In this document: piece after piece, positions 28,451 to 52,651 of the stretch
How positions within the stretch are numbered: the stretch's first letter is position 1
Layout: every line of letters starts with the position of its first letter
Assembly: GCF_035594765.1 (NCBI RefSeq)
Contig: NW_026943818.1
Coordinates: 18,360,229-18,424,228, forward strand
Origin: Anolis carolinensis
Taxonomy: Eukaryota
Reading direction: 5' to 3'
Length of the DNA stretch: 64,000 nucleotides
The notes under the pieces: generated by a model
What the model saw: only the letters and a program-made list of their open reading frames with translations
What the model was told of the DNA's origin: nothing
Databases searched by the model: none
Translations under genes and position numbers: made by a program

Positions 28451-28456
28451 TTTATT
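28451..28456 (-). terminator. PolyA signal AATAAA of ATPase copy A
   Basis: AATAAA about 83 nt past the stop; the homologous site in copy B (45261-45266) is the variant AGTAAA. Confidence 0.65.
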
Positions 28457-28538
28457 TCTTATAGGAATAATTTTGACACCATTCCGCCCAAAGGTAACAC
28501 ACCACTAGAACATCTTTAAAATCAGCAAAGTCGTCAGA

Positions 28539-31500
28539 TCAGTAGTAGGTCTCCCTGTCAAACCAACCACCAGGATGTCTGCGGATAATAAGCTTCCGGA
28601 TTTCGTCATAGACGAAAATCAGCAGGCTGAATGGCATGGGGTAAATCCACCACATGAGCTGGAGCGGGTACATGCGCAAGGCAACCTCCATGCCGGGGCA
28701 GTATGACAGGAAGACCGCCAGGGTGGTTTCCTGAATGATGCCGAAGATCAGGATCTTGTTATTCATGCCCTGCTGGAAGACAGAAAGCTTCCGGGTCTTG
28801 CAGGTGATCAGGTCCATCCATTGCACAACCACAATGCTGCAGAAGAAGGCGGTGTGGCAGGTGTATTCGATCACTTTCCGCTGCTCGTAAGTCCACTGCT
28901 GGCCATAGCTGTCCTCCAAGTCATTCTTGGATTGGTCGTCCCAATCCAGGCGGATCCCTAACAAGGTGGTGGGGAAGAACCCGTATTCAGCCATGATCAT
29001 GAAGTAAGTGAAGAAGCCGGCAATGGCTTGCATCATGCCGACCTGCCCGTACGACTTGCTGATGAGGCGTTCATTCACTAGCTTGTCTGTCTTGGAGTTG
29101 CGTGGTTGCCTCTTCATGATGTCACTCTCCGCCTTCTCGTAGGCCAGGGAGATGGCGGGCACCATGTCAGACCCCAGGTCAATGCACAGGATGGCAATGG
29201 TTCCCAGAGGCAATGGGATGCTCAAGATGATAAACATCAGGAAAGGGGAGATCTCTGGGATGTTGCTGGTCAAGGTGTAGGCGATGGACTTCTTGAGGTT
29301 GTCAAAGATCAGCCGGCCTTCCTCCACGCCTGTCACGATGGAGGCAAAGTTGTCATCGAGCAGGATCATGTCTGCAGCTTGTTTGGAGACATCGGAGCCA
29401 GCGATGCCCATGGCGATGCCGATGTCGGCCTTCTTGAGCGCGGGAGAGTCGTTCACTCCATCACCCGTCACGGCCACAATGGCTCCCTGCCGCTGGCACC
29501 CTTCCACAATAATGAGTTTCTGTTGCGGGGAAGTGCGGGCAAAGACAATCTCGCTGTGGTTCCTCAGGACGTCATCCAATTCTTCAGAGGTCATATCTTT
29601 GAGGTCGCTTCCATGAATCACACAGGCCTTGGCTTCTCTTGGGTTCACCTCAGAGACGGGGATGTTGAGTCGTTCAGCAATGTCCTCTACCGTCTCAGTC
29701 CCCTCAGAGATGATGCCCACTCCCTTGGCAATGGCTTTGGCGGTGATCGGATGATCCCCAGTCACCATGATCACCTTGATCCCGGCACTTCGGCATTTCC
29801 CGACGGCGTCTGGCACAGCTGCCCGAGGCGGGTCGATCATGGAGATGAGCCCAACAAAGCAGAGTTTGTTGATGGGGAAGTTGACTTTCTCCACGTCAAA
29901 TTTGAAGGCTCGGGGAAATTGCTTCTCAGGGAGGTAGCTCTGGCAGAAACCCAGCACCCTCTCGCCCAGCCCTCCCAGCTCATGATAAGCATTCTGAAAG
30001 GCCTGATGCATTGTTTTGTCCAAGTTGACTTCCTTCCCATTAATCATGATGGTGGAACATACATCAAGGATCCTCTCGGGAGCCCCTTTCATCACCAGGA
30101 TGTGGCCTTTGGGTTTATCCTCGGCTTCATGGATGGACAGCTGGTATTTGTTGGTGGAGTTGAAAGGAATCTCCACTACTTTAGGGTTCTGCTCCCGCAT
30201 GGTCGCCACAGACCCGTAGGAGAGCTCTACGCTTTTCAGGAGTGCTGACTCAGATGCGTCCCCAGTAGTTTCCCTCTTGGCAACAGGGACGTCCTCCTGC
30301 CCAGGCTTGAAGTCAGCCCGGTTGCAGAGCCCGGCGATACGGGTGAGGGCCAACCAAGTGGGTGAGCGTTTCATCATCACTGCCCCTGCTTGTTGCTCAG
30401 TGGTGTCAGCAGCAAAGATCTCATTGTCATACCACATATGAGCAACAGTCATACGGTTCTGGGTCAAGGTTCCGGTCTTGTCTGAGCAGATGGTGGAGGT
30501 GGAGCCCAGCGTCTCCACTGCCTCCAGGTTCTTCACCAGGCAATTCTTTAAGGCCATGCGCTTGGCTGTGAGGGCCAGGCAGACAGTGACAGTGGGCAAG
30601 AGCCCTTCGGGGACGTTTGCCACGATTATGCCGATCAAGAAGACAACTGCTTCCAGCCAGCGGTAACCGAGTATAATGGCCAGGATGAAGAAGGTAACTC
30701 CCAGGAAAACAGCCACAGAGGTGATGATATGGATGAAGTGTTCAATCTCTCGGGCAATGGGGGTGGATCCTTCCTCCAGGCCGGACGCTAAGGAAGCAAT
30801 GCGTCCCATCACGGTATCATCTCCCGTTAAGATCACGACGCCTCGAGCAGTTCCTTCCACACAGTTGGTTGAGAAGAAACAAATATTGCGCGTTTCCAGT
30901 GGGTTGTCATGGGTGTAATCTGCACTTCGGCTCTGCGGCTCTGATTCACCCGTGAGGGAGGAATTGTCCACCTTGCAGCCGCTGGCCGAGACAATCCGCA
31001 AATCGGCGGGGATCCGGTCTCCTCCTTTGATCTCCACCAAGTCCCCCACCACCACTTCCTCCGCATTGATCTGCGTCCTCTTGCCGTCCCGGATGACCAG
31101 GGCTTTCTGTGGTACCATGTGCTTGAAAGACTCCATGATCTGGGAGCTTTTGGCCTCCTGGTAATAGGAGAAGAAGCCTGTGATCACCACCACCGATGTC
31201 AATACAATACCCAGGTAGAGGTGGTCCATTTGCGCGTGGCTCTCCATGAGTTCCTGGATGCCATAGGCAATGAAGCAGAGGACGGCCCCGATCCACAGCA
31301 GGATGCTGAAGCCCCCAAAGAGCTGGCGACAGAATTTGACCCACTCTGGCGTGGTCGGGGGCGGCGTCAGGGCGTTGGGGCCATCCCGGGCCAAAATTTC
31401 TGCCGCTTGGGTTGTAGTAAGGCCTGTGCTCAGGTCAGTCTTATACTTCTGGGTGAGTTCTTCCAAGGAGAGCTTGTGGTCATCGATGTCCACTTCCTTC

Positions 31501-31568
31501 TTCAGATCATCCAGGTCTTCCCCCTTTTTCTTCTTGCCTTTCTTCGGAGGGGGTTTCTTCTTCCCCAT
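28539..31568 (-). CDS. Intronless Na+/K+-ATPase alpha subunit, alpha2/alpha4-like retrogene, copy A (1009 aa), nested antisense in TMEM211-like intron 2
   Basis: Single uninterrupted ORF with [35 protein letters not shown] and C-terminal ETYY; vertebrate ATP1A genes normally have over 20 exons. Confidence 0.97.
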
Positions 31569-31739
31569 AATGGCAGTGGTCCCTTTCCTCGGGACCTCTT
31601 AATGATATCTAGGGGTACAGAAGGGTGGGCGGGGCAGTCTAATGGAAGAGGAATCAGGAGGAGCAATGAAGGGGAGCAGGATGCCCCCCCAAAGGGACCT
31701 CCCACCCCCCAAAGTTGGACAAGAGTTGGGACAACAGGC

Positions 31740-32000
31740 CACGTTGCCTGTTAAGAGACCCTCCTCACTGACCACCTTGAGAAGACTGAAGACCAAGGCC
31801 CTAGCAACCAACCAAATGTTTGTCTTCTAGTATCTGAGACTCCTCCCCTTAGTAACTGAGGCCACGCCCCCAGCAACTGAAATCACAGCTCCCAGGAAAC
31901 CTAATGGGTCTTGTCTCTTAGCAACCAAGACTCAGCCCACCTCTGATGGCAACAAATGGAGGTATTGCCCTAGAACCTGAGGCCCCGCCACTTCCGTGCA
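31740..32000 (-). promoter_or_regulatory. Putative promoter of ATPase copy A: RFX X-box-like, GC-box and ETS-like motifs
   Basis: CCTAGCAAC (31800), GTCTCTTAGCAAC (31913), ATGGCAAC, GCCACGCCC, GCCCCGCC, ACTTCCG within about 430 bp of the ATG. Confidence 0.55.
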
Positions 32001-32509
32001 AATATATGATTTTTCCTTGATAATAGGGAGATTACAGTCAGTTATTAGAATAATACTATTTTTTGTACAATTTCTAGGTCCTCCAGGGCAACTCTGGGAT
32101 CAACTTCCTCCAAAAGTGCTGGAGGACCAGGTTTTTCTTATACTCAAGGCAGTTTTTGTCAGTTTTTTTATATAGCCTGGGTACCCAGTGTTGTTTGAAA
32201 AAAATGGATGTTATGAATGGACCCATGAGAAATTGATGCAGCTCCATGGCTGATAGGGTTAGCAGTAGTTTGGATGTGGGTGAAGGTACTGCAAATCCCA
32301 TCATCCGTGGTCCATTATCCCCCAAATTGCACCAGGACGTAAGGTGGATCATGGGGGGGGGGCTGTGTGCCATTTGGTTCAGATCTCTTGTTTGTGGGGG
32401 TTGCAGTGATCTGTGAAAGTGGGAACCAAACCTGCCACTCACATACTCCACCGCTCATATACATACCCACAAACATACATACAAACAAACATTGGCTTTT
32501 ATTACTATA

Positions 32510-32762
32510 TTTCAAATCCAGGGAGCAGGGTGAGCTCCCACAGCCTCAGCTTCTGCCAACCCAGCAGTTCGAAAACATGCAAATGTCATTAGATCAATAG
32601 TTACTACTCTGACAAGAAGGTAGCGGCGATCCATGCCGTCATGCCAGCCACATGACCTTGGAGGTGTCTATGGACAACGCCAGCTTAGAAATGGAGATGA
32701 GCACCAATCCACAGAGTCAGACATGACTAGACTTAATGTCAGGGGAAAACCTTTATCTTTAC
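32510..32762 (+). mobile_element. Sauria SINE
   Basis: CAGCAGTTCGAAAACATGCAAATGT..CACATGACCTTGGAGG..GGGGAAAACCTTTA tail. Confidence 0.85.
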
Positions 32763-34137
32763 GTATATAAAATATAGAAATATTACCTACAATGCATAGT
32801 ATTCACTGACAGTCTCCCATGCAAGTACTAATTTAGTTTCCAACATCAAATGGGATCTGGTGCCTTTAGGCCCTACAAGGGATTATAGAAGTTTTCATTT
32901 CATTCAACTCGACAAAAAATTCAAGCTGCTAAAGTGTAATAGAAAAGTATGCAATTAAAATACCCATGGAAGAAAAACTATCATATCTCTCAGTCTGTAA
33001 CCTTTTTTGTTTTCTCCGCCGTCTGTCTGGGGATTCAAGGGACATTAAGGCCAGTTGAATGAGTGTAGCATCAGGGTCAAGAGGAAAGATGGATGCCTCA
33101 TCTCGCAAATCTGAGCGGCTATTATCTGGTCTCTATGGATTTCCCTGTAGAGTGTGAAAAAATGCACCCCAGAACTATAGCAATTGCGATGTTTTGGATT
33201 AAAATCGGGCTGAGTTTGGCTTTCATGAGCAGGACACGTCTCCTGCTTCGCTCGGGTTTGTCCTTCTCTTATTGTGGAATTGATTCAGCAATTTTCTAAT
33301 GCCCAGAGGAAAGGACATCTCCCAATCCACCTTCATAGTTCATTCAAGCAAAATGGCAAAAATCCACTCTCTCCTAAAATTCATTCCTTCCAAGCAATTT
33401 GGGATCTATCCATGGTGCTGAAGTTAACTTTTTTAAAAAATTGCCCAACGGAATTGCTCATCTCTCATCTGTCTATCTCTTTGTCTGCCTGTCCATATCA
33501 GCTCCCTCTCTCTTCATCTCTCTCTCTGTCTGTCTGTTTCTTCATCTATCTATTTATCTACCTGTCTGCCTATTCTATCCATCTATCTCTTCATCTCTAT
33601 CATTCGGTATTCCTTCTTACCTTGCTGTCTGTCTATTAATCCCTTTTTCTTCATTTTTCTCATTCAATCCATCTATCTCCCTGCCTACCTGTCTATCTAT
33701 TTATATATCGCTCTTAACCTCTCTCTCCATCCATCGCTGTGGCTACGAAAAAGAATGGTTAAAGGCAATGGAGATTCCTAGATATTCTCCATCCAAGGCC
33801 TAGACTCCATCCCTCCTCTCTCTTCCTTTTCTTTTGGAAGGGGAAGTCCATTTCTCCTTGCATTTGTGCTTCATGGGCAGTGCTGACTTGGTAGCATTGC
33901 CTTGATGAAGCGGTAAGTCAAATCCTGGCGTCTGGTGCCACCTAGAAGCTCTTGCTCGAAATGCAGCAGTAGCTCTGCTTTGTAGCAGTGGCCCATGCCT
34001 CATCAATACCTTGCTTTGGCCACTGCAGAGCATCCAACCTGGGACATAAAGGATGCCTAGCGAGGATCTATTTTGTCAGATGGATGAAACCGTAGGTACT
34101 AGTCCCGTGGATATAGAGTTTGTCCTGCAATTACATA

Positions 34138-35034
34138 TCATCAAGTTTGCAGACGACACCAAACTGGGAGGGATAGCTAACACTCCAGAAGACAGGAGCA
34201 GAATTCAAAACGATCTTGACAGACTAGAGAGATGGGCCAAAACTAACAAAATGAAGTTCAACAGGGACAAATGCAAGATACTTCACTTCGGCAGAAAAAA
34301 TGGAAATCAAAGATACAGAATGGGGGACGCCTGGCTTGACAGCAGTGTGTGCGAAAAAGACCTTGGAGTCCTCGTGGACAACAAGTTAAACATGAGCCAA
34401 CAATGTGATGCGGCTGCTAAAAAAGCCAATGGGATTCTGGCCTGCATCAATAGGGGAATAGCGTCTAGATCCAGGGAAGTTATGCTCCCCCTCTATTCTG
34501 CCTTGGTCAGACCACACCTGGAATACTGTGTCCAATTTTGGGCACCACAGTTGAAGGGAGATGTTGACAAGCTGGAAAGCGTCCAGAGGAGGGCAACTAA
34601 AATGATTAAGGGTCTGGAGAACAAGCCCTATGAGGAGCGGCTTAAAGAGCTGGGCATGTTTAGCCTGCAGAAGAGAAGGCTGAGAGGAGACATGATAGCC
34701 ATGTACAAATATGTGAAGGGAAGTCATAGGGAGGAGGGAGCAAGCTTGTTTTCTGCTGCCCTGCAGACTAGGACACGGAACAATGGCTTCAAACTACAGG
34801 AAAGGAGATTCCACCTGAACATCAGGAAGAACTTCCTCACTGTGAGAGCTGTTCGACAGTGGAACTCTCTCCCCGGGGCCGTGGTGGAGGCTCCTTCCTT
34901 GGAGGCTTTTAAGCAGAGGCTGGATGGCCATCTGTCGGGGGTGCTTTGAATGCGATTTCCTGCTTCTTAGCAGGGGGTTGGACTAGATGGCCCATGTGGT
35001 CTTTTCCAACTCTACTATTCTATGATTCTATGAT
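34138..35034 (+). mobile_element. 5'-truncated young CR1 LINE (ORF2 C-terminus plus 3' tail)
   Basis: Open frame IKFADDTKLGG...RLDGHLSGVL*, tail ending (ATTCTATG)n; absent at the paralogous site near 49340. Confidence 0.95.
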
Positions 35035-36336
35035 CTCTCAACCAACATCTTAATCCAAGACTAAACGGTTCTGTCCGGTTTCAGCAGAAAATGGTAAGTT
35101 GTTTTATAGCCAGGTCGTAAATCATCTCAGTGAAAAGGATGTGTCAAATGGAAACAGTTGGATGCTGTACGGTTTGGGAAACAGAAGTCAGTGCAGGAAT
35201 TGTCGCCCTCGGCGCCAGGAAGATTAGAAAGCAGCAGAGAATATAAGGTGACCTTCTCTGGGAAATTGATGCCGGTGGCCTGAGCCATAAACCATCTTCC
35301 TGCTGATGCAGATTTTTCTTATCCTGGGTGGCAAAGTACTCCAGGGAAAGTCTCTTAAGGTGATTTAAAGGAAATGAACACAGGGAAACGGACGTTGGGG
35401 GGATCGAAGGCACCTCAAGAAAGGTGAACCTTATATGTCCATATTCCAGCTCTCGGATTTAGGTTTTGCCCCATGCAAAGGAATGGGATCCGTTTCTCTT
35501 GGGACAGGGCACTCCTTCTTCTTTGCTATGTTGACATTGACAGCTGTTCTTAGCGGTGTCTCTGAAAACACCACACTTGGATGGTTTATTGGATACTCTG
35601 CGTCACGGCATTGTTCCTACAGTTGTACTGGATGAGTTCATTTTTCCCCCTCATCTGATATTAATGTCGACAGCAACATGTTCACTCACCATATGTATAA
35701 GTCTATGGTTCATAATGATGGGCTGAGCTCTTGCCTTTCACCACTCTGCTCAGAGAAGGGGATGATCCCTTGTTTGAGGAAAGATTCTTGTACAATGCTC
35801 ATGTTGATAAGCCAACCTGAGTTTGTTGGAGTTGATTGTGGGACTAAAATCTCTAGACAGGAGCATTTGATGTTTGGGTGGACGTCCCTCCTGGGTCCTT
35901 AAAAAGGGACGTCTTAAGGCAAAGAAGTAATTGTCAAGAAAAGAGTTTCACTCCAGTACATCTCATCCTGTGAAAAGACCAGACGCTCACACACTTTGAG
36001 ATATGCTTTTAGTGGCTTTTTAGGGTCACATTTTGTTCCCAAATGCCTCCTCTTAGGGGACATTTGCCACATTTCTTCCAAACAGGACGTGAAGGTTGAT
36101 TGTTGATGTAGAATGAAAGGGAAAAAATGGAAAGGAAAGTGGAGGAAATGGTATCTCCCTGCTGCAGAAATAGTTTCCATTTATCCTCCATGTGTGTCAA
36201 ACCACAACTGTGCCCCAACTGGCCACTTATTTATTACCATTATACATGAAGCCCTTCACACAACACAAAGAGTCCTTTCTGGCTGTCGTCTGTGGTGTTT
36301 TGTCATTGAACTGTATTAGAAATGTTGAGAAATGTT

Positions 36337-36568
36337 GGGCCGGGCTGTGGCGCAGGCTGAAGAGCAAGCCAGCTGCAACCAGCTGCAATGAATCACTCTG
36401 ACCAGGAGGTCATGAATTTGAGGCCCGCTCGGAGCCTATGTTTGTCTTGTCTTTGTTCTATGTTAAAAGGCATTGAATGTTTGCCTATATGTGTAATGTG
36501 ATCCGCCCTGAGTCCCCTTCGGGGTGAGAAGGGCCGAATATAAATGCTGTAAATAAATAAATAAAAAT
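36337..36568 (+). mobile_element. Anolis SINE2-type element (tRNA head, L2-like tail)
   Basis: GGGCCGGGCTGTGGCGCAG head; CCGCCCTGAGTCCCCTTCGGGGTGAGAAGGG..(AAAT)n tail. Confidence 0.75.
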
Positions 36569-36886
36569 AAATGGGAGGGAACGGGAATAAATCATCTTCT
36601 GAGATCTGGGAACGGGAGAAAGTTCTTAAAAACACATGGCCTGGGATCTGTCAGAGTGGATGGGGATTACACTCACTCATGTGATGGTTCAGAATGGGAA
36701 AGGCTGGAAAATATAACGTGTCTGATGAGATCCATAAAATGAAAGGATGTCTTTTTAAACGGAAGGGGATGATACACTTTGTTACAGAGAGGATCCTCGG
36801 TGCTTCCTGCGACGTGTCTGATGAAGTACTTTGAGACTAACGCTTATCTCTTCTTGTCTCCCTTTCCCCCGTCTTTTCTCCTCCAG

Positions 36887-37113
36887 TGTCCATCATGGCG
36901 TTTGGGCTCTTGGTCTACCCTTTTGGCTTGGCTTCTGCAGCTGTGAGGAAGCGCTGCGGAAACGCGGGTGTCTACTACGCGGGTGACTGCCAGATCGGCT
37001 GGGGGTACATGCTGGCCATTGTGGGCGTCATGCTCTCCGTCTTCCTGCCCTTCTTCGCCAAATACACCCCCAAGGAGCAGGCCTCCCCCACCCCGATACC
37101 CACCATTTTATAG
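36887..37113 (+). CDS. TMEM211/LHFPL7-like, last coding exon
   Basis: Strong acceptor; VSIMAFGLLVYPFGLAS...C...YYAGDCQIGWGYMLAI...; phase-compatible with exon 2; total CDS 636 nt = 211 aa. Confidence 0.87.
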
Positions 37114-39794
37114 TATTTTTTCAGCCCTTTTCCACCAAGGATTCCGACGTTCCCGAATTGCGTTGACGCATGTTCGCCATACGCTTGAAAAACACAAGCA
37201 TTCCCGATCGGCGGGAAACAAATCTGGCGGATTGGATGCCTCAAGAGAAAGATAAGAGATCTGGGTTTTTATCCTGGAAATATCTGTCTACCTCCCAGTT
37301 TCTTCTTTATGTATGTGTCTTTTTTCTCTTGAAAACCTTTTTAAAACCTGGATTCACTTTTGTATCTTCTTGACTTCACTTCTGGGCCTTTTTTTTTGAA
37401 GTTTTTAATTGTGTGAGTGATAAGATTAAATAGTGGAAGGACAACACGTTATTCACTGAGGAAGGGGTCTCTTCCTTTTTGGCCTTTTATTTGTGCATGC
37501 CAATCCCGAACAGAGAAAGACCTTTTTTCTACTGTGGTCATTTGAATTTAGTTTAATTTTATTGCTGAATTCATGTGGTGAATCAGATGATTGAAAAGTG
37601 ATGGGGCATATTTCCAAGTGTGGTTTCATACAGGTGTCCCGAATGTGGACCAGGGAGGTCTCCGAGTGAGCCTTGTTTTCCATGAGTGTGGTTTGAGTAC
37701 TGGGACCTCATCACAATAGGAAATACTCCATTTCTGATACAATTTGGGAACGATTTCCAATGGGTTCCATTACACGACGTTTGCCACATCCCGTCAGTAA
37801 TCTGTCTGCAAAATGTCGCAGAACCAGAGTATTTTTATACATGATTCTAATCCTTGCATTTAAAATCATACAAAGTTTTCCATCGCTGAAGTGCTGTTTT
37901 TTTGTGTGATCAAGAAATCAGTATGGATCCCGTCAGCAACTATTAGACTTCAAATTCAGTGGTGTGTCTAGGGGGAAAAGTCTCTTGCCCTTGGACTGTT
38001 TGTGATGGAAGCAGCCACCATTTCTGTTTGGGATGTCGAAGGACCATAAAAGGAAATCGGGAATTGCCACTTTACCTCATTCTATTTTTTTAAAAGATTT
38101 TAACTAGAATCTGTGCAATTTCTTCCTATTAGTCAATAACTATTATGCCTTCTCAGGAGGAGAAGTGGCATTGTCAGAAGCTGCCGTCGCCTCTGCATCG
38201 CCTTGAGTTCAGCTTCATGAAACCGAAGGATGCAGTAAAGGAGCCATATCGAATGAATCAATCTTATCATTTAGAAATCTGATAAGATTAAATTCCTCAG
38301 TAATCCTGATTCAATTCTGCAGTACTCTTTATTTCACACCAAAAGGTAGCAATCAGGTAAATGCATTTACTATGCAGATGTGAGAATGCTTTCAAATCTC
38401 GCAAGAGTGGTAGTTCAAGACTTCGAGGCTACACAATATGAGATTTTTTAAAGGGTCATGGAGGGATGTAGAGAGTTTTCTGAACAGATTGGAGGAGACA
38501 TCCTTCCGTGGTGTGATGAGTCAAAGCGGAGTATTTTCTGAAGGTAAAAATCATAGTATTTGAGTGTGATGGGTCAGTATGCAACCCGTCTGAAAACAGT
38601 ATGCAATCAGGAAAAAAAAAAAACCAATGCGATTCATACTCATAGAAACAGATTACAACCATGGAGACTAAAGTTCGAATCTCCACTCACTGGTCCAGTC
38701 ACATACTTCAGGAAGCCCATGATAAGGTCGCCATGAGTTGGAAATGACTTGAAGGCCCACAACAACAAGGGCCATTCTCATCATTATCGCATTGCCACTG
38801 TGATAATTTCGAAGTGAAATGGGGCGATTTGTGGGTTGGAATAGACATGTGTCAGAGTTTGCCTGACAAATGCCCTCTACAATTCTCTGTAGTGTTTCTC
38901 AGTAGGGATGGGCTTGGCCTAGATGGCCCCTGGAGTACCTTCAGATCCTTATATGTTATCTGTGCTTCCGTTCGCTGGCTAAGAATCCCATATCACTCCA
39001 CTAGCAAAGTTGGTGAGAAATATCAACACTCCAGAGATCTCCTTGTGAAATGGTTTGGAAAACGAACCCATTCCCATCTCCAAAAATAGTCTCCAGTTGA
39101 CCATAATTCTTTCATTGTTGAAAACTGGAATGTGAGCCACAAGTAAGAATACAAGTTTTGTTGATGTGGTTTCTTTGAGCAATAACTCTTTGATTTTTGC
39201 ATTTTTACATTTGCTTCTTTTTTGGTCATTTCTCAGACTAAGAAGGGATGGATAGACCCGCTTCATTTACTTCTCACTTTTCCAACTTTCCTTTCAGGGC
39301 CTGGAGTTTCTCCAGACTTTAACTTGGCTCCTTCCATCCACCAAGAAAAGAAATGGTAGGCAAATTAGTAAACAGTTTTATGTGTGTGTTCACTGGACCC
39401 ATGCCTTTTTTAAGGGTACAGTTTGGCCTTGTATATGCAATTTTGGTAAGCGTGTTTGTCCTATAAGTCCTTCACAATATTGTACAGACAGTCCTCACTC
39501 AGGGATTGACATTCAACCACCATGTTTGCCACAAGCCACATCCCTGATGAATATGGATTTGTTTGGAGTTTTTAAATATCAGAAATAACCAGTTTGTTCC
39601 CAATTTTAGGGAAAGAACACATGCGTTTTGGCTCAAGCCAAAACATTAAAGGAGAATCATGTTTTCTTGGGCTTCCAGAATGTTAATTTGCATGGTCCCC
39701 CCCCCCCTTCAAATAAAGTAGTCATAAAGACTGGCAGGAGGCAAGTGAATTTTCAGGCGTTGTGCCCCCTGCTATAATAGATATCTCCTGTGGA

Positions 39795-39850
<56 letters not shown>

Positions 39851-41047
39851 ATGGATTCCTAAACTATTTTATTTTTTATACTTGTGAAGTTTGGGGAAGT
39901 GCCAAATTTTGGAAGATACTGAGTTTTGATTGACATCTATTGACTCAAAAGTGAAAAAATTCTAGTGAGACTTAAAAAGTATAAATCAAATTAATATAAT
40001 TTCCATTCTTAGTAAGATTCTTTTGTGTTTTATGGAATCCTGCCACATTTCAGTGTCTACATCAAGGGCAATAAATTGCGCCTGAGATATTACTGGACTG
40101 CATCTCCCATAAAACAAACAAATTTTCTAGACATGGTTTTTCCCCTTGAGTGATGCTCATCCCATTTAAAGTCCGATGTGTCTTTATCTCTCATTGCTCG
40201 ATCAAACCAATTTTACCGTGCAAAATTTGTAATAAGAAAGTAAGAGAAATGCAGGGTTAGGGTGGGCTGCCATCTTTTCTGTCCTAACTAGCCTGTGCCT
40301 TTTCAAATCAGGATGAACCATTTGCAGCAGCAAACAATGGCTATTAAATATTAAATGTTCATAACGCAGTGAAAATGGTGTACCGTCTTGTTGTAAAAAA
40401 AAAAAACAGAAAATCAACTCTGTATTTTGTATATGTGTGCTTTTTTCTTTAAACCTGATTTCTAGAACTTGAATGGACTATCCACTTTTCCCCTCCAAAA
40501 CTGGTTACTGTCGCCATTTGTTTCTGAGGTGTCTCTGGGGAAATGCTTGAACAATGCTTCCATTTTGTAATTTGAAAACTCTAGGAACTGTTGCTTTAGG
40601 TTCGACAGTTCCTTAAATACATGGCTATGCAGGTTCAAAACAAAAAATGTTGGATTTCTTGTGGTTCTCGGAGGAGATTGGCTGTGCACTTGTCCCTCCT
40701 CCACATTTGCGTTTTCGACTTCTGTGGATTTGATTATTCACAGATTTGACTGAAAATGTCCTTTCTCCCTTCTTCTGCGAAAGGCGACACGAATGACCGA
40801 TTCAGATCCAATTTTTATTCTAAAACTATATATATATAATATATATATTTAAATATCTATATAAAGATTTTACATGTAACAAAAAAGTTGTGTTTTCCAT
40901 GACTGTGGTTTTTCCCTGTATTTTTTGTCAAAGTGGCCCCTTTTTTTAGACAACTAACTCCCCAATGTCCTTTGTATTTGACTTGTGGAAGGAAATGCTT
41001 TCCATGGTTTGAAGTGTGACTTTTATGACTTGCCAACACTGTGTTAT

Positions 41048-41053
41048 AATAAA
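41048..41053 (+). terminator. Candidate polyadenylation signal of the TMEM211-like gene (about 4-kb 3'UTR)
   Basis: AATAAA preceded by TGTA/U-rich sequence and followed by GU-rich sequence; another AATAAA exists near 39712. Confidence 0.4.
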
Positions 41054-42111
41054 GCAATTCCTTGCTGTTGATTGAGTTTCGCTCTTGCTATTTGTGTCAT
41101 ATCAGGGAAAAGCTTGCATGCCGGCTGCCATCTCGTGTATGGGAGTCTCTTGTTTTAATGCTCATATAATAACTTTACCCATCTTTTGGACTTTAAATTC
41201 AGACACTTCACAGCAAACGTTTCGTGAAAGCTACAAAAAGAACAGATTCCTCATTTCAGCCGTCCCCGCTTTTGCTCTGGGCCCCCAGCCATCCAATGAG
41301 TTAATATTTTGATCTGTTGCAGACTTGAGAGTAATTTCTTGGAAAATGCCCTAAATAAATGGAAAGGTGATTGTCTTGAATTGGTATTGATCTCGCTATT
41401 ACTTCCAATCAATTGTAGCCGGAGGTGTAATTAGTTTGCTTCTGCTGGGTTGAACTAAGTGGTGGCAGGCATCCTAAATGCAAGGAAATTGCCTTAAAAT
41501 CTCATTCTCAACAATAAGTGGCACAAGGGACCAATCTTGCAATTCATGTTTTTCAAGAAGACGGAGAAATAAAGGAAGCCACCAGGAAATCTACTTTGCA
41601 TCTTGTCCCGTTGGGTCTAAGATTCCCTTCAGGCCATTCCTTCTCCTCGCATTGACATTTTCAAAGGTCTTTCTTGAAAAAGTTCCAAAAGAATGGGTTT
41701 CTTTTGTGGGTTAATGTTGTCTTAATGCAGGATGGATGGTATTTTAAATGTTTGGAGCTTTCTTCCTTTGAGACCTGGTTGTATGTTTATTGGCCTGGAT
41801 TCTCGTGTTGTTGAAGAGTGATCAATACTGATGTAAATCCTGTTGGTTCACTTAGAATGGCATCCCACACCTTTCCCTCCACTGTTTCTAAACACTTCTA
41901 GAACAGTTAAGAGACAAAATACAACAGAGCCCATCAAATGGTGCAGACAGGTTTCCGAAATTTAGGGGACAGAAGATGGGGAGTAATTGTCTTCTTGGCT
42001 CACAATGTGCTCAGAAACAGGAAAAGGCCCTTTAAAACACGTAGGATGGGATCTGTCAGATTTGCCCACGTTGAATAATCTTGGTGACAAGAGTAATGGG
42101 CATTCCTAATG

Positions 42112-42272
42112 CTGCTCATCTCCATTTCTAAGCCGAAGAGCCAGCGTTGTCCATAGGCACTCCAAGGTCATGTGGCCAGTATGACTGCATGGAGCACTGT
42201 TACTTTCTCGTTGAAGTGGTACCTATTGATATACTCACATTTGCATATTTTTGACCTGCTTGGTTGGCAGAA
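42112..42272 (-). mobile_element. Sauria SINE fragment
   Basis: Reverse complement of the 32510-32762 body. Confidence 0.75.
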
Positions 42273-43894
42273 CAGCAGGAGTTACTCACATTTGCAGAGG
42301 TAGTGCTCTGTAGGAGAGGTAGCGATCTGTAAAAAGTGCTAGTACAATAAGTACTATAAATAAGTACTGTGTACTATGTCTTTCGCATGGTCCGAGGCTT
42401 TGGGGACCCAACTACTGGTAACATGAGATTTCAAATTTTTCCCAGGTTTTTTTTTTTTTTTAAATAGGAGTGGACGGGAACTAAACTTTGATGTTCTAAA
42501 TTACAAAGAGTGCACTTTTGGCTGCTGTGTATTACATTCGGCAGAAAATATGGTCCTCCATTTCTGAAACAGATTACAGACAGAGTTCGACACATTACCG
42601 TCGGGATGGAGGTGAACGTCGTGTGATGGGACCCATTGGAAATTGTTATCAAACGGTTTCAGGAATGGCATATTTCCTAATGTGATGGAACTCCGTCATC
42701 AAAAGCATTGCCAAAATAACCAGTTGCGGTCTCTTGAGCATAATACAACGGGCTGAGCGATCCCAATGCGCAATTGAATAGTTTGCAGTGTTTTAGTAGC
42801 ACAGAAATTTGTAGTTTCATCTGTTCACTGCAAAGAGATGGAGGGATTCGAAGTCTAAAGGACTGCAAATGCCTTCCCAAATGCGGTTTCCTTCATCTGT
42901 ATGAAATGAGAAACCGTGAACACATATTCTGGATACAGGAGAGGATGAGAAGAACACCAAATCCTGGTTAGAATCAAAACCCTTTTTGGATTTAGATCCC
43001 AACCTGGCCAAAATAGGATAACGTTTGCAACCCATAAAGGGTATATTTCCCAAAAGTCTCAGGCAAAAGCAATTTGCGGCATTCTTTCCCGGTTTATAGT
43101 GTTTTCCCTCATTCGTTCACGGTGTTTTGCCCTCATGAGCAGCCCCACATTTTCATCTCATTTCATTTCATCTCATTTCATTTCATACACATCGTTCTTC
43201 ATCCCACGAAACTCTCTCCATCTTTCCCGGAGAGGCCTATTGTGTATCAATGATCGCGGCTCCCTGCTTTCAAATCCCATTTTTATTTTCCGGCCGCTCC
43301 GCAGATGGCAGCGTTTTGCATGCAGCGCCTTCAAAATTATCATCCGAATGAGATTAAATGTGAAAACGCAGTCGAGATGTTTGCCTGGGAGGGAGGCACA
43401 CAAAAGCAGGGCGGTTGTGAGAGATAGAAAGGTCTCTTCCCACCCCCACCCCCACCCCGTTCTTCTCTATTCCTCCCATTCCTTTCTCTCTGAACAAAAT
43501 GCGTAGTCTTCCAGCTGCAGAACCATCGTGACTGTGATGTCGCTTGAGGGCAAAGAAACGAATAAAGAGATGCCTTCTTGTGAAGCTGCATCATAAAGGG
43601 ATAGTCAGCCTTCCACGTTGGCTGCTGTTAGGGGCACAGGACCCCTTTGTGAAATAGCAGTTTTAAAAACCTAAGACAGGGACCGCAAACTTTTTACGCC
43701 ATGGGCTGGTTCACAGTCCCTCAGATTGTCAAGTGTGCTTTCGGCTGATGAGAGAGTCAAGCTAATTATGATGGTTCTTGCTGTTGCCTTCAAGTTGTCC
43801 CAGACTTATCAGTTTTCTTGTCAAGATTTGTTCAAAGGAGATATTCATTTATCTTCATTTGAGGCTGAGAGAGTGTGGCTTGGCTACAGGCAGC

Positions 43895-44180
43895 CTCCCT
43901 CCCTCTCCTTTTTTCTCCCTCCCTAATTCCCTTCCTTCCTTTTCCTCTTTCTCCCTCCTCCCTTCCTGTCTCATTTCCTTTCTTCTTTCCTCCCTTTTCT
44001 CTCAGCTTCCTTTTATACTTCCTTCACTTGCCCCTTTCTCCCTCCCTCATTCCCTTTCTTCTTTCCTTTTTTCCTTTCCTCTCTCCTTCTTTCCATCCTT
44101 CCTTTCTTTCTTGCCCTTGCTTCCCCCTCTCTCATTCCCTTCCTTCCTTCCTTCTTTCCTTTCTTTCTTCCTTCTTCCTC
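43895..44180. repeat. Long polypyrimidine/polypurine low-complexity tract
   Basis: Nearly pure C/T on the plus strand. Confidence 0.85.
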
Positions 44181-44443
44181 AGTGGCATCTTATGCGAAAG
44201 CAGCGTGAGGGAAATGGCAGCAGCAAAAAGGTGCCAATGCAAAAGGGTTGGTGACAGGGGCCGGATAAATGTCCTTGGTGGGCCTATATCTCTCCCAAAG
44301 GCCATAATTTGAGGATCCCTGACCTAAAACAACATCTCCTCTTGCCCTTTTCAGTACAAATGACATTGAACTCAGTTTGCAGCCACTGGAATAAGACAAG
44401 AGCAAAGGCAGGAGGAGACTATAGAAAATGGGACTCTTTAGAA

Positions 44444-45147
44444 CAGGGGTCCTCAAACTTTTGAAGCAAAGGGCCGGTCCACAATTCTTCAGACTGTTGT
44501 GGGGCCAAATTATCATTTGAAAAAAAATACAAATTCCTATGCATACTGCACATGTCTTATTTGTAGTGAAACAACAACAACAACAACAACAACAATGAAA
44601 GAACAATACAATATTTAAAAATGAAAACAATTGTAACCAACATAAACCTATCAGGATTTCAATGGGAAGTGTGGGCCTGCTTGTGGCCAATGAAATAGTC
44701 AAGTTAATTAGGATTGTTGTTGTTGTGTGACTTCAAGTCATTTCAGACTTTGGCCGAGCCTAAGTCTAAACTTAATTATTTATTTACTGCATTTATTTAC
44801 TACATTTATATCTCACCCTTCTCACCCTGAAGGGGACTCAGAGCAGCTATATGTACATACAATATATTATATTATTAGCATAGCACAATATTAGCATTAT
44901 ATAATTCTATATTGAACTATACCACTATACTATTATATGTTATGTAATATATAACATATAATTAATATTATTATATTAGTATTATATTGTATAACATAAT
45001 ATTATTATCAATATTATATGTATATACAATATATTATATTATTAGAACTGATATAAAAATATCATATTATAAAACTGAGGGCGGGGGCCAGGTAAATGAC
45101 CTTGGAGGGCCGCATTCGGCCCCCAGGCCTTAGTTTGGGGACCCCTG
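44444..45147. mobile_element. Non-autonomous hAT transposon (OposCharlie-like termini)
   Basis: TIR CAGGGGTCCTCAAACT / AGTTTGGGGACCCCTG; 8-bp TSD CTTTAGAA (44436-44443, 45148-45155); empty site in paralogue near 27605. Confidence 0.93.
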
Positions 45148-45358
45148 CTTTAGAAGTTGAAAAGAACTTGCCCTTTTACCCTTTAGTCAGTCAAAAGGAA
45201 TCGTGGAAAGACAGGGAAGAAAAATACATCTTAGATTATTTCATTGAATTAAAGAGCTGTTTTACTTCTTACAGGAACGTTTGTGAGATCATTCTGCCCA
45301 AAGGTAACACACCACTAGAAGTTCTTTAAAATCAGCAAAGTTGTCAAATGTGGACAGA

Positions 45359-48300
45359 TCAGTAGTAGGTCTCCCTCTCTACCCAACCGTCAGGATGTCT
45401 GCGGATAATGAGCTTCCGGATTTCGTCATAGACGAAAATCAGCAGGCTGAATGGCATGGGGCAAAGCCACCACGTGAGCTGGAGTGGGTACATGCGCAAG
45501 GCAACCTCCATGCCGGGGCAGTATGACAGGAAGACCGCCAGGGTGGTTTCCTCAATGAGGCCGAAGATCAGGATCTTGTTATTCATGCCCTGCTGGAAGA
45601 GAGAAAGTTTCCGGGTCTTGCAGATGATCAGGTCTGTCCACTGCACAACCACAATGCTGCAGAAGAAGGCGGTGTGGCAGGTGTATTCGATCACTTTCCG
45701 CTGCTCGTAAGTCCACTGCTGGCCATAGCTGTCCTCCAAGTCGTTCTTGGATCGGTTGTCCCAATCCAGGCGGATCCCCAACAAGGTGGTGGGGAGGAAC
45801 CCGTATTCAGCCATGATCACAAAGTAAGTGAAGAAGCCGGCAATGGCTTGCATCATGCCGATCTGCCCGTACGACATGCTGATGAGGCGTTCATTCACTA
45901 GCTTGTCTGTCTTGGAGTTGCGCGGATGCCTCTTCATGATGTCACTCTCTGCCTTCTCGTAGGCTAGAGAGATGGCGGGCACCATATCGGTCCCCAGGTC
46001 AATGCACAGGATGGTGATGGTTCCCAGAGGCAATGGGATGCTAAAAATGATAAACATCAGGAAAGGGGAGATCTCTGGGATGTTGCTGGTCAAGGTGTAG
46101 GCGATGGACTTCTTGAGGTTGTCAAAGATCAGCCGGCCTTCCTCCACGCCTGTCACGATGGAGGCAAAGTTGTCATCGAGCAGGATCATGTCTGCAGCTT
46201 GTTTGGAGACATCGGAGCCAGCGATGCCCATGGCGATGCCGATGTCGGCCTTCTTGAGCGCGGGAGAGTCGTTCACTCCATCACCCGTCACGGCCACAAT
46301 GGCTCCCTGCCGCTGGCACCCTTCCACAATAATGAGTTTCTGTTGCGGGGAAGTGCGGGCAAAGACAATCTCGCTGTGGTTCCTCAGGACGTCATCCAAT
46401 TCTTCAGAGGTCATATCTTTGAGGTCGCTTCCATGAATCACACAGGCCTTGGCTTCTCTTGGGTTCACCTCAGAGACGGGGATGTTGAGTCGTTCAGCAA
46501 TGTCCTCTACCGTCTCAGTCCCCTCAGAGATGATGCCCACTCCCTTGGCAATGGCTTTGGCGGTGATCGGATGATCCCCGGTCACCATGATCACCTTGAT
46601 CCCGGCACTTCGGCATTTCCCGACGGCGTCTGGCACAGCTGCCCGAGGCGGGTCGATCATGGAGATGAGCCCAACAAAGCAGAGTTTGTTGATGGGGAAG
46701 TTGACTTTCTCCACGTCAAATTTGAAGGCTCGGGGAAATTGCTTCTCAGGGAGGTAGCTCTGGCAGAAACCCAGCACCCTCTCGCCCAGCCCTCCCAGCT
46801 CATCATAAGCTTTCTGAAAGGCCTCTTGCATTGTTTTGTCCAAGTTGACTTCCTTCCCATTGATCATGATGGTGGAACATACATCAAGGATCCTCTCGGG
46901 AGCCCCTTTCATCACCAGGATGTGGCCTTTGGGTTTATCCTCGGCTTCATGGATGGACAGCTGGTATTTGTTGGTGGAGTTGAAAGGAATCTCTGCTACT
47001 TTAGGGTTATGTTCCCGCATGGTCGCCACAGACCCGTAGGAGAGCTCTACGCATTTCAGGAGTGCTGACTCAGATGCGTCCCCGGTAGTTTCCCTCTTGG
47101 CAACAGGGACGTCCTCCTGCCCAGGCTTGAAGTCAGCCCGGTTGCAGAGCCCGGCGATACGGGTGAGGGCCAACCAAGTGGGTGAGCGCTTCTTCATCAT
47201 CACTGCCCCTGCTTGTTCCTCAGTGGTGTCAGCGGCAAAGATCTCATTGTCGCACCACATATGAGCAACAGTCATGCGGTTCTGGGTCAAGGTTCCGGTC
47301 TTATCTGAGCAGATGGTGGAGGTGGAGCCCAGCGTCTCCACTGCCTCCAGGTTCTTCACCAGGCAATTCTTTAAGGCCATGCGCTTGGCTGTGAGAGTCA
47401 GGCAGACAGTGACGGTGGCCAAGAGTCCTTCGGGGACGTTTGCCACGATTATGCCGATCAAGAAGATAACCGCCTCCAGCCAGTGGTAACCGAGTACAAT
47501 GGCCAGGATGAAGAACGTCACTCCCAGGAAAACAGCCACAGAGGTGATGATATGGATGAAGTGTTCAATCTCTCGGGCAATGGGGGTGGTTCCTTGCCCT
47601 AGGCCAGATGCTAAAGAAGCAATGCGTCCCATCACAGTATCATCTCCCGTTAAGATGACGACGCCTTGAGCAGTTCCTTCCACACAGTTGGTTGAGAAGA
47701 AGCAAATATTGCGTGTTTCGAGCGGGTTCTCGTTGGTGTAATCTGCGCTTCGGCTCTGCGGCTCTGATTCACCCGTGAGGGAGGAGTTGTCCACCTTGCA
47801 GCCGCTGGCTGAGACAATCCGCAAATCGGCGGGGATCCGGTCTCCTCCTTTGATCTCCACCAAGTCCCCCACCACCACTTCCTCCGCATTGATCTGCGTC
47901 CTCTTGCCGTCCCGGATGACCAGGGCTTTCTGTGGTACCATGTGCTTGAAAGACTCCATGATCTGGGAGCTTTTGGCCTCCTGGTAATAGGAGAAGCAGC
48001 CTGTGATCAGCACCACCGATGACAATACAATACCCAGGTAGAGGTTGTCCTTTTGCGCGTTGCTCTCCACTAGCTCCTGGATGGCATAGGCAAAGAAGCA
48101 GAGGATGGCCCCGATCCACAGCAGGATGCTGAAGCCCCCAAAGAGCTGGCGACAGAATTTGACCCACTCTGGCGTGGTCGGGGGCGGGGTCAGGGCGTTG
48201 GGGCCATCCCGGGCCAAAATTTCTGCCGCTTGGGTTGTAGTAAGGCCTGTGCTCAGGTCAGTCTTATACTTCTGGGCGAGTTCTTCCAAGGAGAGCTTGT

Positions 48301-48391
48301 GGTCATCGATGTCCACTTCCTTCTTCAGATCCTCCAGTTCTTCCCCCTTTTTCTTCTTGCCTTTCTTCAGAGGAGGTTTCTTCTTCCCCAT
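45359..48391 (-). CDS. Intronless Na+/K+-ATPase alpha subunit, alpha2/alpha4-like retrogene, copy B (1010 aa)
   Basis: Same P2C ATPase motifs; intact ORF ending [12 protein letters not shown]. Confidence 0.97.
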
Positions 48392-48504
48392 AATGGCAGT
48401 GGGGTACCTTTCCTCGGGACCTCTTAATGGTATCTAGGGGTACAGAAGGGTGGGCTGGATAGACCTCCCACACTCCAAAGTTGGACAAGAGTTGGGACAA
48501 CAGG

Positions 48505-48657
48505 CCAAGTTGCCTGTTAAGAGACCCTCCTCACTGACCACCTTGAGGAGACTGAAGACCAAGGCCCTAGCAACCAACCAACCAACCATCTTTGTCTTCT
48601 AGTATGAGACTCCTCCCCTTAGCAACCGAGGCCACGCCCACAGCACCCAGGAAACCT
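48505..48657 (-). promoter_or_regulatory. Putative promoter of ATPase copy B (shorter version of copy A promoter)
   Basis: CCTAGCAAC (48566), CTTAGCAAC (48618), GCCACGCCC; homologous to about 31740-31902. Confidence 0.5.
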
Positions 48658-52440: not shown

Positions 52441-52651
52441 CTGTATGAGCGAGCAATAAGTAAGTAAATAAACATAAAATACATAGATTAAAAAAATTGT
52501 AAAAACATAAACCAAACAGGCTGCAAAATCAATATATAGCGGTAATAAAATGCAAATTGAAAACTCATGATTCAGAGTTGATATAGGTATTATTATTATA
52601 ATTTATACCTTCTTTTTTCCCTCTAAAAGAGAGACTCAAAGTGGCTTATTG

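What the first reader, a model, noticed from the sequence alone, without database searches (positions are those of the whole stretch)
28539..48391. Two intact intronless Na+/K+-ATPase alpha retrogenes with alpha4 (sperm-isoform)-like signatures in a lizard
Seen: two full-length single-exon P2C ATPase ORFs among AKAP10/SPATA22/SLC43A2, not the ATP1A2/ATP1A4 neighbourhood (KCNJ10/IGSF8/CASQ1). Known: ATP1A1-4 are multi-exon, and ATP1A4 is sperm-specific and usually described as a mammalian duplicate of ATP1A2. From recalled human sequences, the backbone is alpha2-like ([31 protein letters not shown]). Many positions instead match alpha4 rather than alpha1-3: [62 protein letters not shown], and the copy B C-terminus [12 protein letters not shown]. 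Inference: either alpha4 arose before the mammal-reptile split and survives here as retrogenes, or squamates convergently built a sperm-type sodium pump by retroposition.
Basis: partly seen in the sequence, partly recalled or inferred. Interest (0 to 1): 0.95.

Follow-up and report, generated by a model that had tools for sequence, protein, structure and literature searches.

The report
Ancient duplicated sodium-pump retrogene in lizards
Two intact, intron-free copies of a sodium-potassium pump gene in an anole are tandem duplicates of one retrogene made long ago from the alpha-2 pump gene and kept across lizards and snakes; it shares more residues with the mammalian sperm pump (alpha-4) than chance allows, for reasons not yet settled.

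Summary
There are two intact single-exon ORFs on the minus strand, of 1009 and 1010 aa and 95% identical. Both carry every P-type ATPase catalytic motif.

They are not two retropositions. One retrogene sits antisense in an intron of an LHFPL-like gene, and a tandem DNA duplication of at least 6.5 kb copied it.

Single-exon orthologues exist in Podarcis, Varanus and Crotalus. Related proteins occur in 11 squamate genera, which NCBI names "alpha-2-like". dN/dS among orthologues is 0.06-0.17, so this is an old, selected gene.

It derives from a tetrapod-type ATP1A2. A placement at the base of the gnathostome alpha-2 clade is rejected.

The alpha-4 resemblance is partly real. The squamate consensus equals primate alpha-4, against the tetrapod alpha-2 consensus, at 17 columns. 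Simulation under independent origins expects 3.6 (0 of 500 replicates reach 17).

Trees prefer a retrogene+alpha-4 pair, but not significantly (AU 0.16-0.50 for the canonical tree).

I favour parallel change over shared descent, about 2:1. No paper describing this gene was found.

The parts
28539..31568 (-). Copy A: single-exon Na,K-ATPase alpha CDS, 1009 aa (P0001). It lies at the ancestral position, inside the host-gene intron, and is the faster-evolving copy.
   Evidence: It has 34 private amino-acid changes, 13 of them at columns that are at least 95% conserved, including N116H (= N122H in sheep alpha-1 numbering), A325P and T800S.
45359..48391 (-). Copy B: single-exon Na,K-ATPase alpha CDS, 1010 aa (P0002). 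It lies downstream of the host gene's end and is the conservative copy.
   Evidence: It has 17 private changes, only 1 at a conserved column (G1001D).
26672..35457 (.). Duplicated segment around copy A. Relative to B it carries extra insertions at about 31876-33461 and 34140-35036.
   Evidence: Self-BLAST blocks: 28378-31633 (95.8%), 31696-31875 (91%), 33462-34139 (94%), 35037-35457 (91%), 27408-27611 (92%), 26672-26927 (93%).
43261..49776 (.). Duplicated segment around copy B, the tandem partner of 26672-35457.
31800..31925 (-). Upstream cluster of three sense-strand GTTGCYNRG motifs, 230-360 bp 5' of copy A's ATG. This is a candidate promoter element resembling an RFX X-box half-site.
   Evidence: The exact 9-mer GTTGCTAGG occurs only twice in the 64 kb window, once upstream of each copy. 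Such clusters lie within about 180-460 bp upstream of the ATG in Podarcis, Varanus and Crotalus too.
48566..48626 (-). The same motif cluster (two copies) upstream of copy B.
28451..28456 (-). AATAAA 83-88 nt after copy A's stop codon. Copy B has AGTAAA at the matching place. No poly(A) relic or target-site duplication is visible.
   Evidence: read directly.
13534..14184 (+). ORF holding the first coding exon of the host gene (L_HMGIC_fpl profile positions 1-72).
   Evidence: Pfam PF10242, E 2.7e-6; gene call.
36886..37113 (+). Last coding exon of the host gene (L_HMGIC_fpl profile positions 119-175). Copy A lies in the intron before it.
   Evidence: Pfam PF10242, E 1.5e-12; the gene ends at 37113.

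Best explanation
A spliced ATP1A2-type mRNA was reverse-transcribed and inserted, antisense, into an intron of an LHFPL-like gene. This happened in a squamate ancestor no later than the common ancestor of Lacertoidea and Toxicofera. The copy acquired its own promoter, a conserved upstream cluster of GTTGCYNRG motifs. It has been kept ever since as a working Na+/K+-ATPase catalytic alpha subunit that evolves several times faster than alpha-2. In the lineage of this anole, a tandem DNA duplication of at least 6.5 kb produced copies A and B. B stays conservative. A is collecting changes at otherwise invariant pump residues, including N122H at the cardiotonic-steroid site. The excess of alpha-4-like residues arose on the retrogene's stem branch. 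I think it more likely reflects parallel change after leaving the alpha-2 role than shared descent with alpha-4. About half of these residues are reversions of alpha-2-specific states to the alpha-1/alpha-3 state. The rest are new states such as N120K, V-to-D in NRAVF and A-to-T before GDASES. Shown here: the gene structure, the duplication, orthology, purifying selection, alpha-2 ancestry and the excess of shared states. Inferred: the retroposition mechanism, pump activity, promoter function, and parallelism rather than common descent. Untested: the tissue of expression.
For: Intact intronless ORFs. Single-exon orthologues in Podarcis, Crotalus and Varanus. The same antisense nesting in an L_HMGIC_fpl gene in Anolis and Podarcis, and a matching flank exon at the same distance and orientation in Varanus. 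The 14 squamate sequences form one clade (SH-aLRT 100). dN/dS is 0.06-0.17 among orthologues, 0.127 for an unsaturated viper pair, and 0.31 for A against B. The flanks are co-duplicated. The retrogene shares tetrapod-alpha-2 states (R402, E646, M108), amniote states (I719, Q511) and sauropsid states (S259, A410, T869). Placed alone, it sits in the tetrapod alpha-2 crown, and fish-level placements are at least 10 lnL worse. The pair at the base of the gnathostome alpha-2 clade is rejected, AU 0.04. The best non-pair topology is the canonical one, and it is not rejected: AU 0.16 under LG+F+G4 and 0.50 under PMSF. The pair's advantage shrinks from 20 to 6.6 lnL under the site-heterogeneous model, as expected for long-branch attraction. 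PMC12862489 reports sauropsid alpha-2 outside a clade of all mammalian alpha-2 and alpha-4, monotreme alpha-2 and alpha-4 clustering together, and single-copy loci in chicken and turtle.
Against: Simulations under independent origins never reach the observed 17 shared states (mean 3.6, 0 of 500). A pair tree predicts 10.9, and 32 of 500 replicates reach 17. Lineage-restricted matches to alpha-4 inside the squamate clade show no excess (5 against 3.6), so there is no independent sign of continuing convergence. Every maximum-likelihood analysis puts the pair first. Only two primate alpha-4 sequences, a 758-aa anole alpha-2 and incomplete mammalian alpha-2 models were available. ATP1A2 is not known as a germline-expressed gene, which makes it an odd source for a heritable retrocopy (general knowledge, not tested).
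Confidence: 0.6

Rival explanations
1. Shared descent with alpha-4. An alpha-2/alpha-4 tandem duplication already existed in the amniote ancestor. Mammals kept the tandem gene. Sauropsids lost it, but squamates kept a retrocopy of its germline-expressed mRNA.
For: The pair is the maximum-likelihood topology under every model tried. Its best positions are sister to tetrapod or to amniote alpha-2. The 17 shared states fit a pair tree (10.9 expected, p about 0.06) and not the canonical tree (0 of 500). The excess sits on the stem branch. Eight of the shared states occur in no other isoform, including N120K, which the alpha-4 cryo-EM paper ties to an alpha-4-specific lipid pocket (PMC11594824). 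A testis-expressed parent gene is a natural source for a retrogene (inference).
Against: AU and KH tests do not reject the canonical tree. The retrogene shares sauropsid-alpha-2 states S259 and T869; a pair tree expects 0.5 such columns and 2 are seen (41 of 500). Published trees put sauropsid alpha-2 outside mammalian alpha-2 plus alpha-4, and monotreme copies are undifferentiated. This reading needs at least two extra gene losses in sauropsids. Overall similarity and both region searches favour alpha-2 or alpha-1 over alpha-4.
Confidence: 0.27
2. The copies are unexpressed or functionless relics whose open frames persist by chance.
For: No RNA evidence was obtained here. Copy A carries 13 changes at near-invariant columns.
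Against: A 3-kb frame is open in at least 5 genomes after dS of 1 or more, with dN/dS 0.06-0.17. All catalytic motifs are kept. An upstream motif cluster is conserved. Small contig sets, guessed to be RNA, hold copy B, while sister runs of the same study do not.
Confidence: 0.03
3. The second copy is an assembly artefact, that is, uncollapsed haplotypes.
For: The two copies are close together and 96% identical.
Against: The flanks differ by large insertions and deletions, and the 6-9% divergence is too high for alleles. Copy B's words are held at 0.57-0.85 by 18 runs from 6 studies. dS between the copies is patchy, 0.014-0.23.
Confidence: 0.02

Closest known systems
ATP1A2 (Na+/K+-ATPase alpha-2), the inferred parent
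   Same: About 80% identical. It shares tetrapod, amniote and some sauropsid alpha-2 signature residues. It has the same Pfam architecture and catalytic motifs. NCBI names the squamate proteins 'alpha-2-like'.
   Different: It has no introns and lies at another locus, inside an LHFPL-like gene. It evolves several times faster: the clade's stem branch is 0.10 with tip branches up to 0.19, against roughly 0.004-0.06 for clean bird, turtle and frog alpha-2 tip branches. It has reverted about 9 alpha-2-specific residues, and its M1-M2 loop is highly variable.
ATP1A4 (mammalian testis/sperm alpha-4)
   Same: It is also a fast-evolving offshoot of alpha-2. It shares 17 consensus states that tetrapod alpha-2 lacks. 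These include K at alpha-1 Asn120, D in NRADF, T before GDASES, A in AGFFTY, I in GTITIL and R in VERETYY.
   Different: Alpha-4 is a multi-exon tandem neighbour of ATP1A2 (PMC12862489), not a retrogene. Overall similarity is lower than to alpha-1/-3. Orthology is unproven, and testis expression of the squamate gene is untested.
Testis-biased functional retrogenes of housekeeping or metabolic genes (for example PGK2, PDHA2)
   Same: It is an intronless copy of a multi-exon parent, has been under long-term purifying selection, and has a new promoter. This comparison rests on general knowledge of retrogenes.
   Different: A 3-kb, ten-helix membrane pump is an unusually long retrogene, and testis bias has not been shown here.

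Membership tests
P2C Na+/K+-ATPase alpha subunit | The phosphorylation motif DKTGT, plus TGES, KGAPE, DPPR, MVTGD and [17 protein letters not shown]. | tested here: met
   All are present in A and B.
P2C Na+/K+-ATPase alpha subunit | Full-length, high-scoring match to solved Na,K-ATPase alpha chains, above H,K-ATPases and SERCA. | tested here: met
   About 1840 bits to alpha-1 and alpha-3, 1450 to H,K-ATPases, 356 to SERCA. The Pfam set is N-terminal, E1-E2, Cation_ATPase, Hydrolase and C-terminal domains.
P2C Na+/K+-ATPase alpha subunit | The cation-site helix motifs (PEGLL, NIPEI, DLGTDM) and the C-terminal YY. | tested here: met
   Complete in B. A has DLGSDM and A325P next to PEGLL.
P2C Na+/K+-ATPase alpha subunit | Na+/K+ transport with a beta subunit. 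| not testable with these tools
   Needs heterologous expression.
Functional retrogene | Intronless CDS, where the parent family is multi-exon. | tested here: met
   There is a single uninterrupted ORF in Anolis (two copies), Podarcis, Crotalus and Varanus. The 22-23-exon structure of ATP1A genes comes from general knowledge.
Functional retrogene | Located away from the parent locus. | tested here: met
   It is nested antisense in an L_HMGIC_fpl gene. The parent locus itself was not retrieved.
Functional retrogene | Poly(A) relic and target-site duplications. | tested here: not met
   None is visible. That is expected after dS of 1 or more, so it carries little weight.
Functional retrogene | Purifying selection. 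| tested here: met
   dN/dS is 0.06-0.17 among orthologues.
Functional retrogene | Transcription. | tested here: inconclusive
ATP1A4 orthologue | Tandem position next to ATP1A2 and a multi-exon structure. | tested here: not met
   It is intronless and nested in another gene. The alpha-4 synteny is from PMC12862489.
ATP1A4 orthologue | Phylogenetic grouping with alpha-4 to the exclusion of alpha-2. | tested here: inconclusive
   The pair is the maximum-likelihood topology, but the canonical tree is not rejected (AU 0.16-0.50).
ATP1A4 orthologue | Alpha-4-specific residues, for example Lys at alpha-1 Asn120. | tested here: met
   K is present in 10 of 12 squamate sequences. Seventeen shared states are seen against 3.6 expected.
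ATP1A4 orthologue | Male-germ-cell-specific expression. | not tested

The most novel reading that the evidence does not exclude
The squamate retrogene is the only sauropsid survivor of an alpha-4 lineage that was already separate from alpha-2 in the amniote ancestor. That would move the origin of the 'mammalian' sperm sodium pump back by more than 100 million years.
Probability: 0.27. Interest if true: 0.85.

Novelty: new member of a known kind. Interest (0 to 1): 0.62.

Why it matters
Vertebrate sodium pumps are usually described as having three widespread alpha isoforms plus a mammal-only sperm isoform. This gene is a further alpha lineage in lizards and snakes. It is old and intronless, and databases know it only as an automatic "alpha-2-like" prediction. 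It shares an unexpectedly large set of residues with alpha-4, including the Lys that reshapes a lipid pocket beside the ouabain site. If the gene is testis-expressed, there are two possible outcomes. It could be an unusually extensive case of molecular convergence between two sperm pumps, which would point to the residues that tune alpha-4's kinetics. Or it could show that alpha-4 is much older than believed. The A/B pair in Anolis also offers a natural comparison at the cardiotonic-steroid site (N122H against N122).

Tried and rejected
1. A region search over residues 396-490 to pull out alpha-4 returned only squamate orthologues and alpha-2. The C-terminal search gave two primate alpha-4 among many alpha-1 and alpha-2. 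No rodent, marsupial or monotreme alpha-4 could be fetched.
2. The 'careful' treekit tree did not finish in two 300-s runs, so only its quick tree is reported. A free search with constraints timed out, background jobs do not survive between calls, and the full C20 evaluation timed out. I replaced these with PMSF scans over fixed placements.
3. The first data sets held flawed models. P0026 looks like an alpha-2/alpha-3 chimera. P0130 has a C-terminal third that is not alpha-2. P0146 and P0137 have aberrant stretches. The tests were repeated on a cleaned set, and the conclusions did not change.
There is no read-level expression or transcript-end data.
5. The Logan contig L004 (a viper) is colinear with the Crotalus genome and shows no splice, so it cannot be called RNA. 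The run id appears in no paper.
6. The anole alpha-2 protein P0173 is not on record with a contig, so the parent locus could not be inspected for a tandem copy.
7. Literature searches for an ATP1A retrogene in squamates found nothing. The library is open-access only, so this is not proof that no description exists.
8. The neighbours AKAP10, SPATA22 and SLC43A2 were not verified. Eight of the ten flanking ORFs scanned had no Pfam hit; the other two are the host-gene exons. The host gene's exons were searched one by one and were not joined.
9. The human entry P0077 returned was not used.
Full report
**Observation**

The window holds two uninterrupted minus-strand ORFs: 28539-31568 (1009 aa, copy A) and 45359-48391 (1010 aa, copy B). 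They are 95% identical in protein. Both match solved Na,K-ATPase alpha-1 and alpha-3 chains end to end at about 1840 bits. That is above H,K-ATPases (about 1450) and SERCA (about 356). Human alpha-4 (8zyj) scores lower, at 1730. All P-type catalytic motifs and the C-terminal ETYY are present in both copies. Copy A alone has DLGSDM where DLGTDM is expected.

**Source and context**

The exact proteins are recorded on one contig of assembly GCA_035594765.1. I take this to be Anolis carolinensis, from memory of the accession and from the 91% hit to A. sagrei.

Gene calls and my own Pfam scan show an L_HMGIC_fpl (LHFPL-like) gene on the plus strand. Its first coding exon lies within 13534-14184 and its last exon is at 36886-37113. 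Copy A lies antisense in an intron of this gene. Copy B lies beyond the gene's end.

**One retroposition, then a DNA duplication**

Self-comparison aligns 26672-35457 with 43261-49776 in six blocks. The CDS block is 95.8% identical and the flanking blocks are 91-94% identical. Copy A's side carries extra insertions. One of these includes a LINE reverse-transcriptase fragment at 34053-34949. Shared flanks mean a tandem segmental duplication, not a second retroposition.

Between A and B, dS averages 0.079 but ranges from 0.014 to 0.23 along the gene. This is consistent with patches of gene conversion. On the tree, A and B are sisters, with A. sagrei next.

**Age and constraint**

NCBI "alpha-2-like" proteins of 81-91% identity come from A. 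sagrei, Pogona, Sceloporus, Podarcis, Lacerta, Rhineura, Salvator, Varanus, Python, Candoia and Crotalus. In Podarcis raffonei, Crotalus adamanteus and Varanus komodoensis the gene is a single exon.

Two observations point to the same insertion in different species:
- In Podarcis the gene is again antisense inside an L_HMGIC_fpl gene.
- In Varanus a 39-aa flank match lies at the same distance and orientation as window 20048-20179.

The 14 squamate sequences form one clade (SH-aLRT 100). dN/dS is 0.06-0.17 between orthologues, and 0.127 for the unsaturated Crotalus/viper pair with dS 0.106. The insertion therefore predates the split of Lacertoidea and Toxicofera, and the gene has been under selection since. 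No gecko, skink or tuatara orthologue appeared in the lists, but the searches were not designed to exclude one.

No poly(A) relic or target-site duplication remains. A short 3' UTR carries AATAAA in A and AGTAAA in B.

**Promoter lead**

The 400 bp upstream of the ATG align weakly across species, but they share sense-strand GTTGCYNRG motifs. There are two or three of them within about 180-460 bp of the ATG in each of the five loci. Background is about 0.07 per kb per strand. The exact GTTGCTAGG occurs only twice in the 64 kb window, once upstream of each copy. The motif resembles an RFX X-box half-site (general knowledge).

**Which isoform it comes from**

Diagnostic columns show that the retrogene carries states derived at three levels of the alpha-2 lineage:
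- tetrapod alpha-2: R402, E646, M108
- amniote alpha-2: I719, Q511
- sauropsid alpha-2: S259, A410, T869

Placed alone on a species-tree backbone, it fits anywhere in the tetrapod alpha-2 crown within 1 lnL. Fish-level placements are at least 10 lnL worse. So it derives from a tetrapod-type ATP1A2.

**The alpha-4 question**

P0223 (macaque, 1029 aa) is alpha-4: it scores 2173 bits to 8zyj against about 1830 to alpha-1. P0222 is the gibbon alpha-4. Only these two alpha-4 sequences could be obtained.

The quick site-heterogeneous tree joins the retrogene clade to alpha-4 (SH-aLRT 93), at the base of the alpha-2 clade. This is a pattern typical of two long branches attracting each other.

I therefore scored fixed placements of both clades on a cleaned 36-row set:

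| Model | Best topology | Canonical tree: lnL deficit | AU |
|---|---|---|---|
| LG+F+G4 | Pair, sister to tetrapod alpha-2 | 20.2 | 0.16 |
| PMSF-C20 (canonical tree as guide) | Pair, sister to tetrapod or amniote alpha-2 | 6.6 | 0.50 |

Here the canonical tree places the retrogene as sister to sauropsid alpha-2 and alpha-4 as sister to mammalian alpha-2. It is also the best of the non-pair trees. Under PMSF, a pair at the base of the gnathostome alpha-2 clade is rejected (AU 0.04). Alpha-4 placed alone is unresolved. The topology tests therefore do not decide the question.

**Site counts decide more**

The squamate consensus equals alpha-4 and differs from the tetrapod alpha-2 consensus at 17 columns. 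I compared this with 500 AliSim replicates under each tree, using posterior-sampled C20 classes and rates:
- Under the canonical tree the mean is 3.6, the maximum is 10, and 0 of 500 replicates reach 17.
- Under a tree with the pair sister to amniote alpha-2 the mean is 10.9, and 32 of 500 replicates reach 17.

Nine of the 17 are reversions to the alpha-1/alpha-3 state (0.76 expected). Eight are states found in no other isoform (2.8 expected; 4 of 500 replicates reach 8).

Four or five of the 17 lie within residues 420-460 of the nucleotide-binding domain (D420, A431, T436, E460). One is K114, which corresponds to alpha-1 Asn120. The alpha-4 cryo-EM paper singles out this Lys as reshaping a lipid/detergent pocket next to the ouabain site (PMC11594824).

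Matches to alpha-4 that are confined to single squamate sublineages show no excess (5 against 3.6). The signal therefore arose on the retrogene's stem branch. In the other direction, the retrogene shares two sauropsid-alpha-2 states, where a pair tree predicts 0.5 (41 of 500).

**Weighing the two readings**

For shared descent:
- The pair is the maximum-likelihood topology in every analysis.
- The 17 shared states fit a pair tree and not the canonical tree.
- The excess lies on the stem branch.
- A germline-expressed parent gene would be a natural source for a retrogene.

For parallel change:
- The canonical tree is not rejected, and the pair's advantage falls by two thirds under the better model.
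- The retrogene carries sauropsid alpha-2 states.
- Published, densely sampled trees and synteny place sauropsid alpha-2 outside all mammalian alpha-2 and alpha-4. Monotreme copies are undifferentiated, and chicken and turtle have single-copy loci (PMC12862489).
- Shared descent requires extra gene losses in sauropsids.
- Half of the shared states are simple reversions of alpha-2-specific residues, which are plausible once the alpha-2 role is left behind.

I put parallel change at about 0.6 and shared descent at about 0.27.

Some of the recalled motifs hold for the whole squamate clade: [20 protein letters not shown] and GTITIL. Others do not:
- MGRIASL is also the sauropsid alpha-2 state.
- EPQSRS varies within primate alpha-4.
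- SEGTET, PFLMFII and H999 occur only in iguanians or a few lineages.
- The D of HPDGW is private to copy B, and macaque and gibbon alpha-4 read HPGGW.

**Copy A against copy B**

With A. sagrei as reference, A has 34 private substitutions and B has 17. Thirteen of A's fall at columns that are at least 95% conserved, against one of B's. A's include N116H (N122H in sheep alpha-1 numbering), C132F, A325P, T332A, T792A, T800S and C976Y. This confirms earlier notes s1-519622 and s1-519722. Copy A is either under relaxed constraint or diverging in function. Its dN/dS against B is 0.31.

**Expression**

Eighteen runs of the same organism, from six studies, hold 57-85% of copy B's sampled words. Several of these are contig sets of only 43-82 million letters. 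Within one study, one run holds 0.76 of the words and two others hold 0.03-0.04. That looks like tissue-restricted RNA, but the run kinds are only guesses and the tissues are coded.

Expression therefore remains untested.

**Novelty**

The proteins exist in databases as automatic "alpha-2-like" predictions. Four searches of the held literature found no description of an ATP1A retrogene in squamates. I rate this as a new member of a known kind: an extra alpha-isoform lineage made by retroposition. It carries an unresolved and statistically real resemblance to alpha-4.

Noticed in passing
window 31221-31223 (copy A codon 116): Copy A has His where copy B and all the other aligned sequences that cover this column have Asn (N122 in sheep alpha-1 numbering). 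This is a classic cardiotonic-steroid-resistance position. The M1-M2 loop is also very variable across the squamate retrogenes, unlike in alpha-1 to alpha-3.
   Followed up: partly
window 34053-34949 (+): A 298-aa ORF with a weak RVT_1 match (a LINE reverse-transcriptase fragment). It lies within the stretch upstream of copy A that is interrupted relative to B, and similar fragments occur in the Podarcis, Crotalus and Varanus flanks.
   Followed up: partly
window 6095-7011, 10856-11603, 14210-15380, 20489-21302, 24242-25124: Several tandem-repeat arrays with 65-90% internal identity lie in the introns and flanks of the LHFPL-like gene.
   Followed up: no
window 9414-9793, 12264-12620, 16761-17096, 22819-23159, 26936-27323, 56991-57375, 62287-62631: A dispersed repeat of about 330 bp, 76-93% identical between copies and present in both orientations. 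It is probably a SINE family.
   Followed up: no
window 44900-45065: A long AT-rich, microsatellite-like tract lies just beyond the end of the duplicated block, downstream of copy B.
   Followed up: no
proteins P0026, P0130, P0146, P0137: Some public alpha-2 models are flawed. Macaque P0026 behaves as an alpha-2/alpha-3 chimera. Opossum 'alpha-2' P0130 (1152 aa) has a C-terminal third that is not alpha-2 and carries alpha-4-like residues (CAIPYS, HPGG, A851), as if a read-through model had fused the tandem alpha-2 and alpha-4 genes. P0146 and P0137 have aberrant internal stretches.
   Followed up: partly
window 50073-58391 (-): A called gene of 423 residues with no Pfam family ends 1.7 kb beyond copy B's upstream flank.
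   Followed up: no
window 20048-20179 (+) and L003 21499-21642 (-): A short conserved coding-like block (56% identity over 39 aa) lies at the same distance and orientation from the retrogene in Anolis and Varanus. Its size fits the missing middle exon of the L_HMGIC_fpl host gene (profile positions about 73-118), but Pfam does not detect it.
   Followed up: partly
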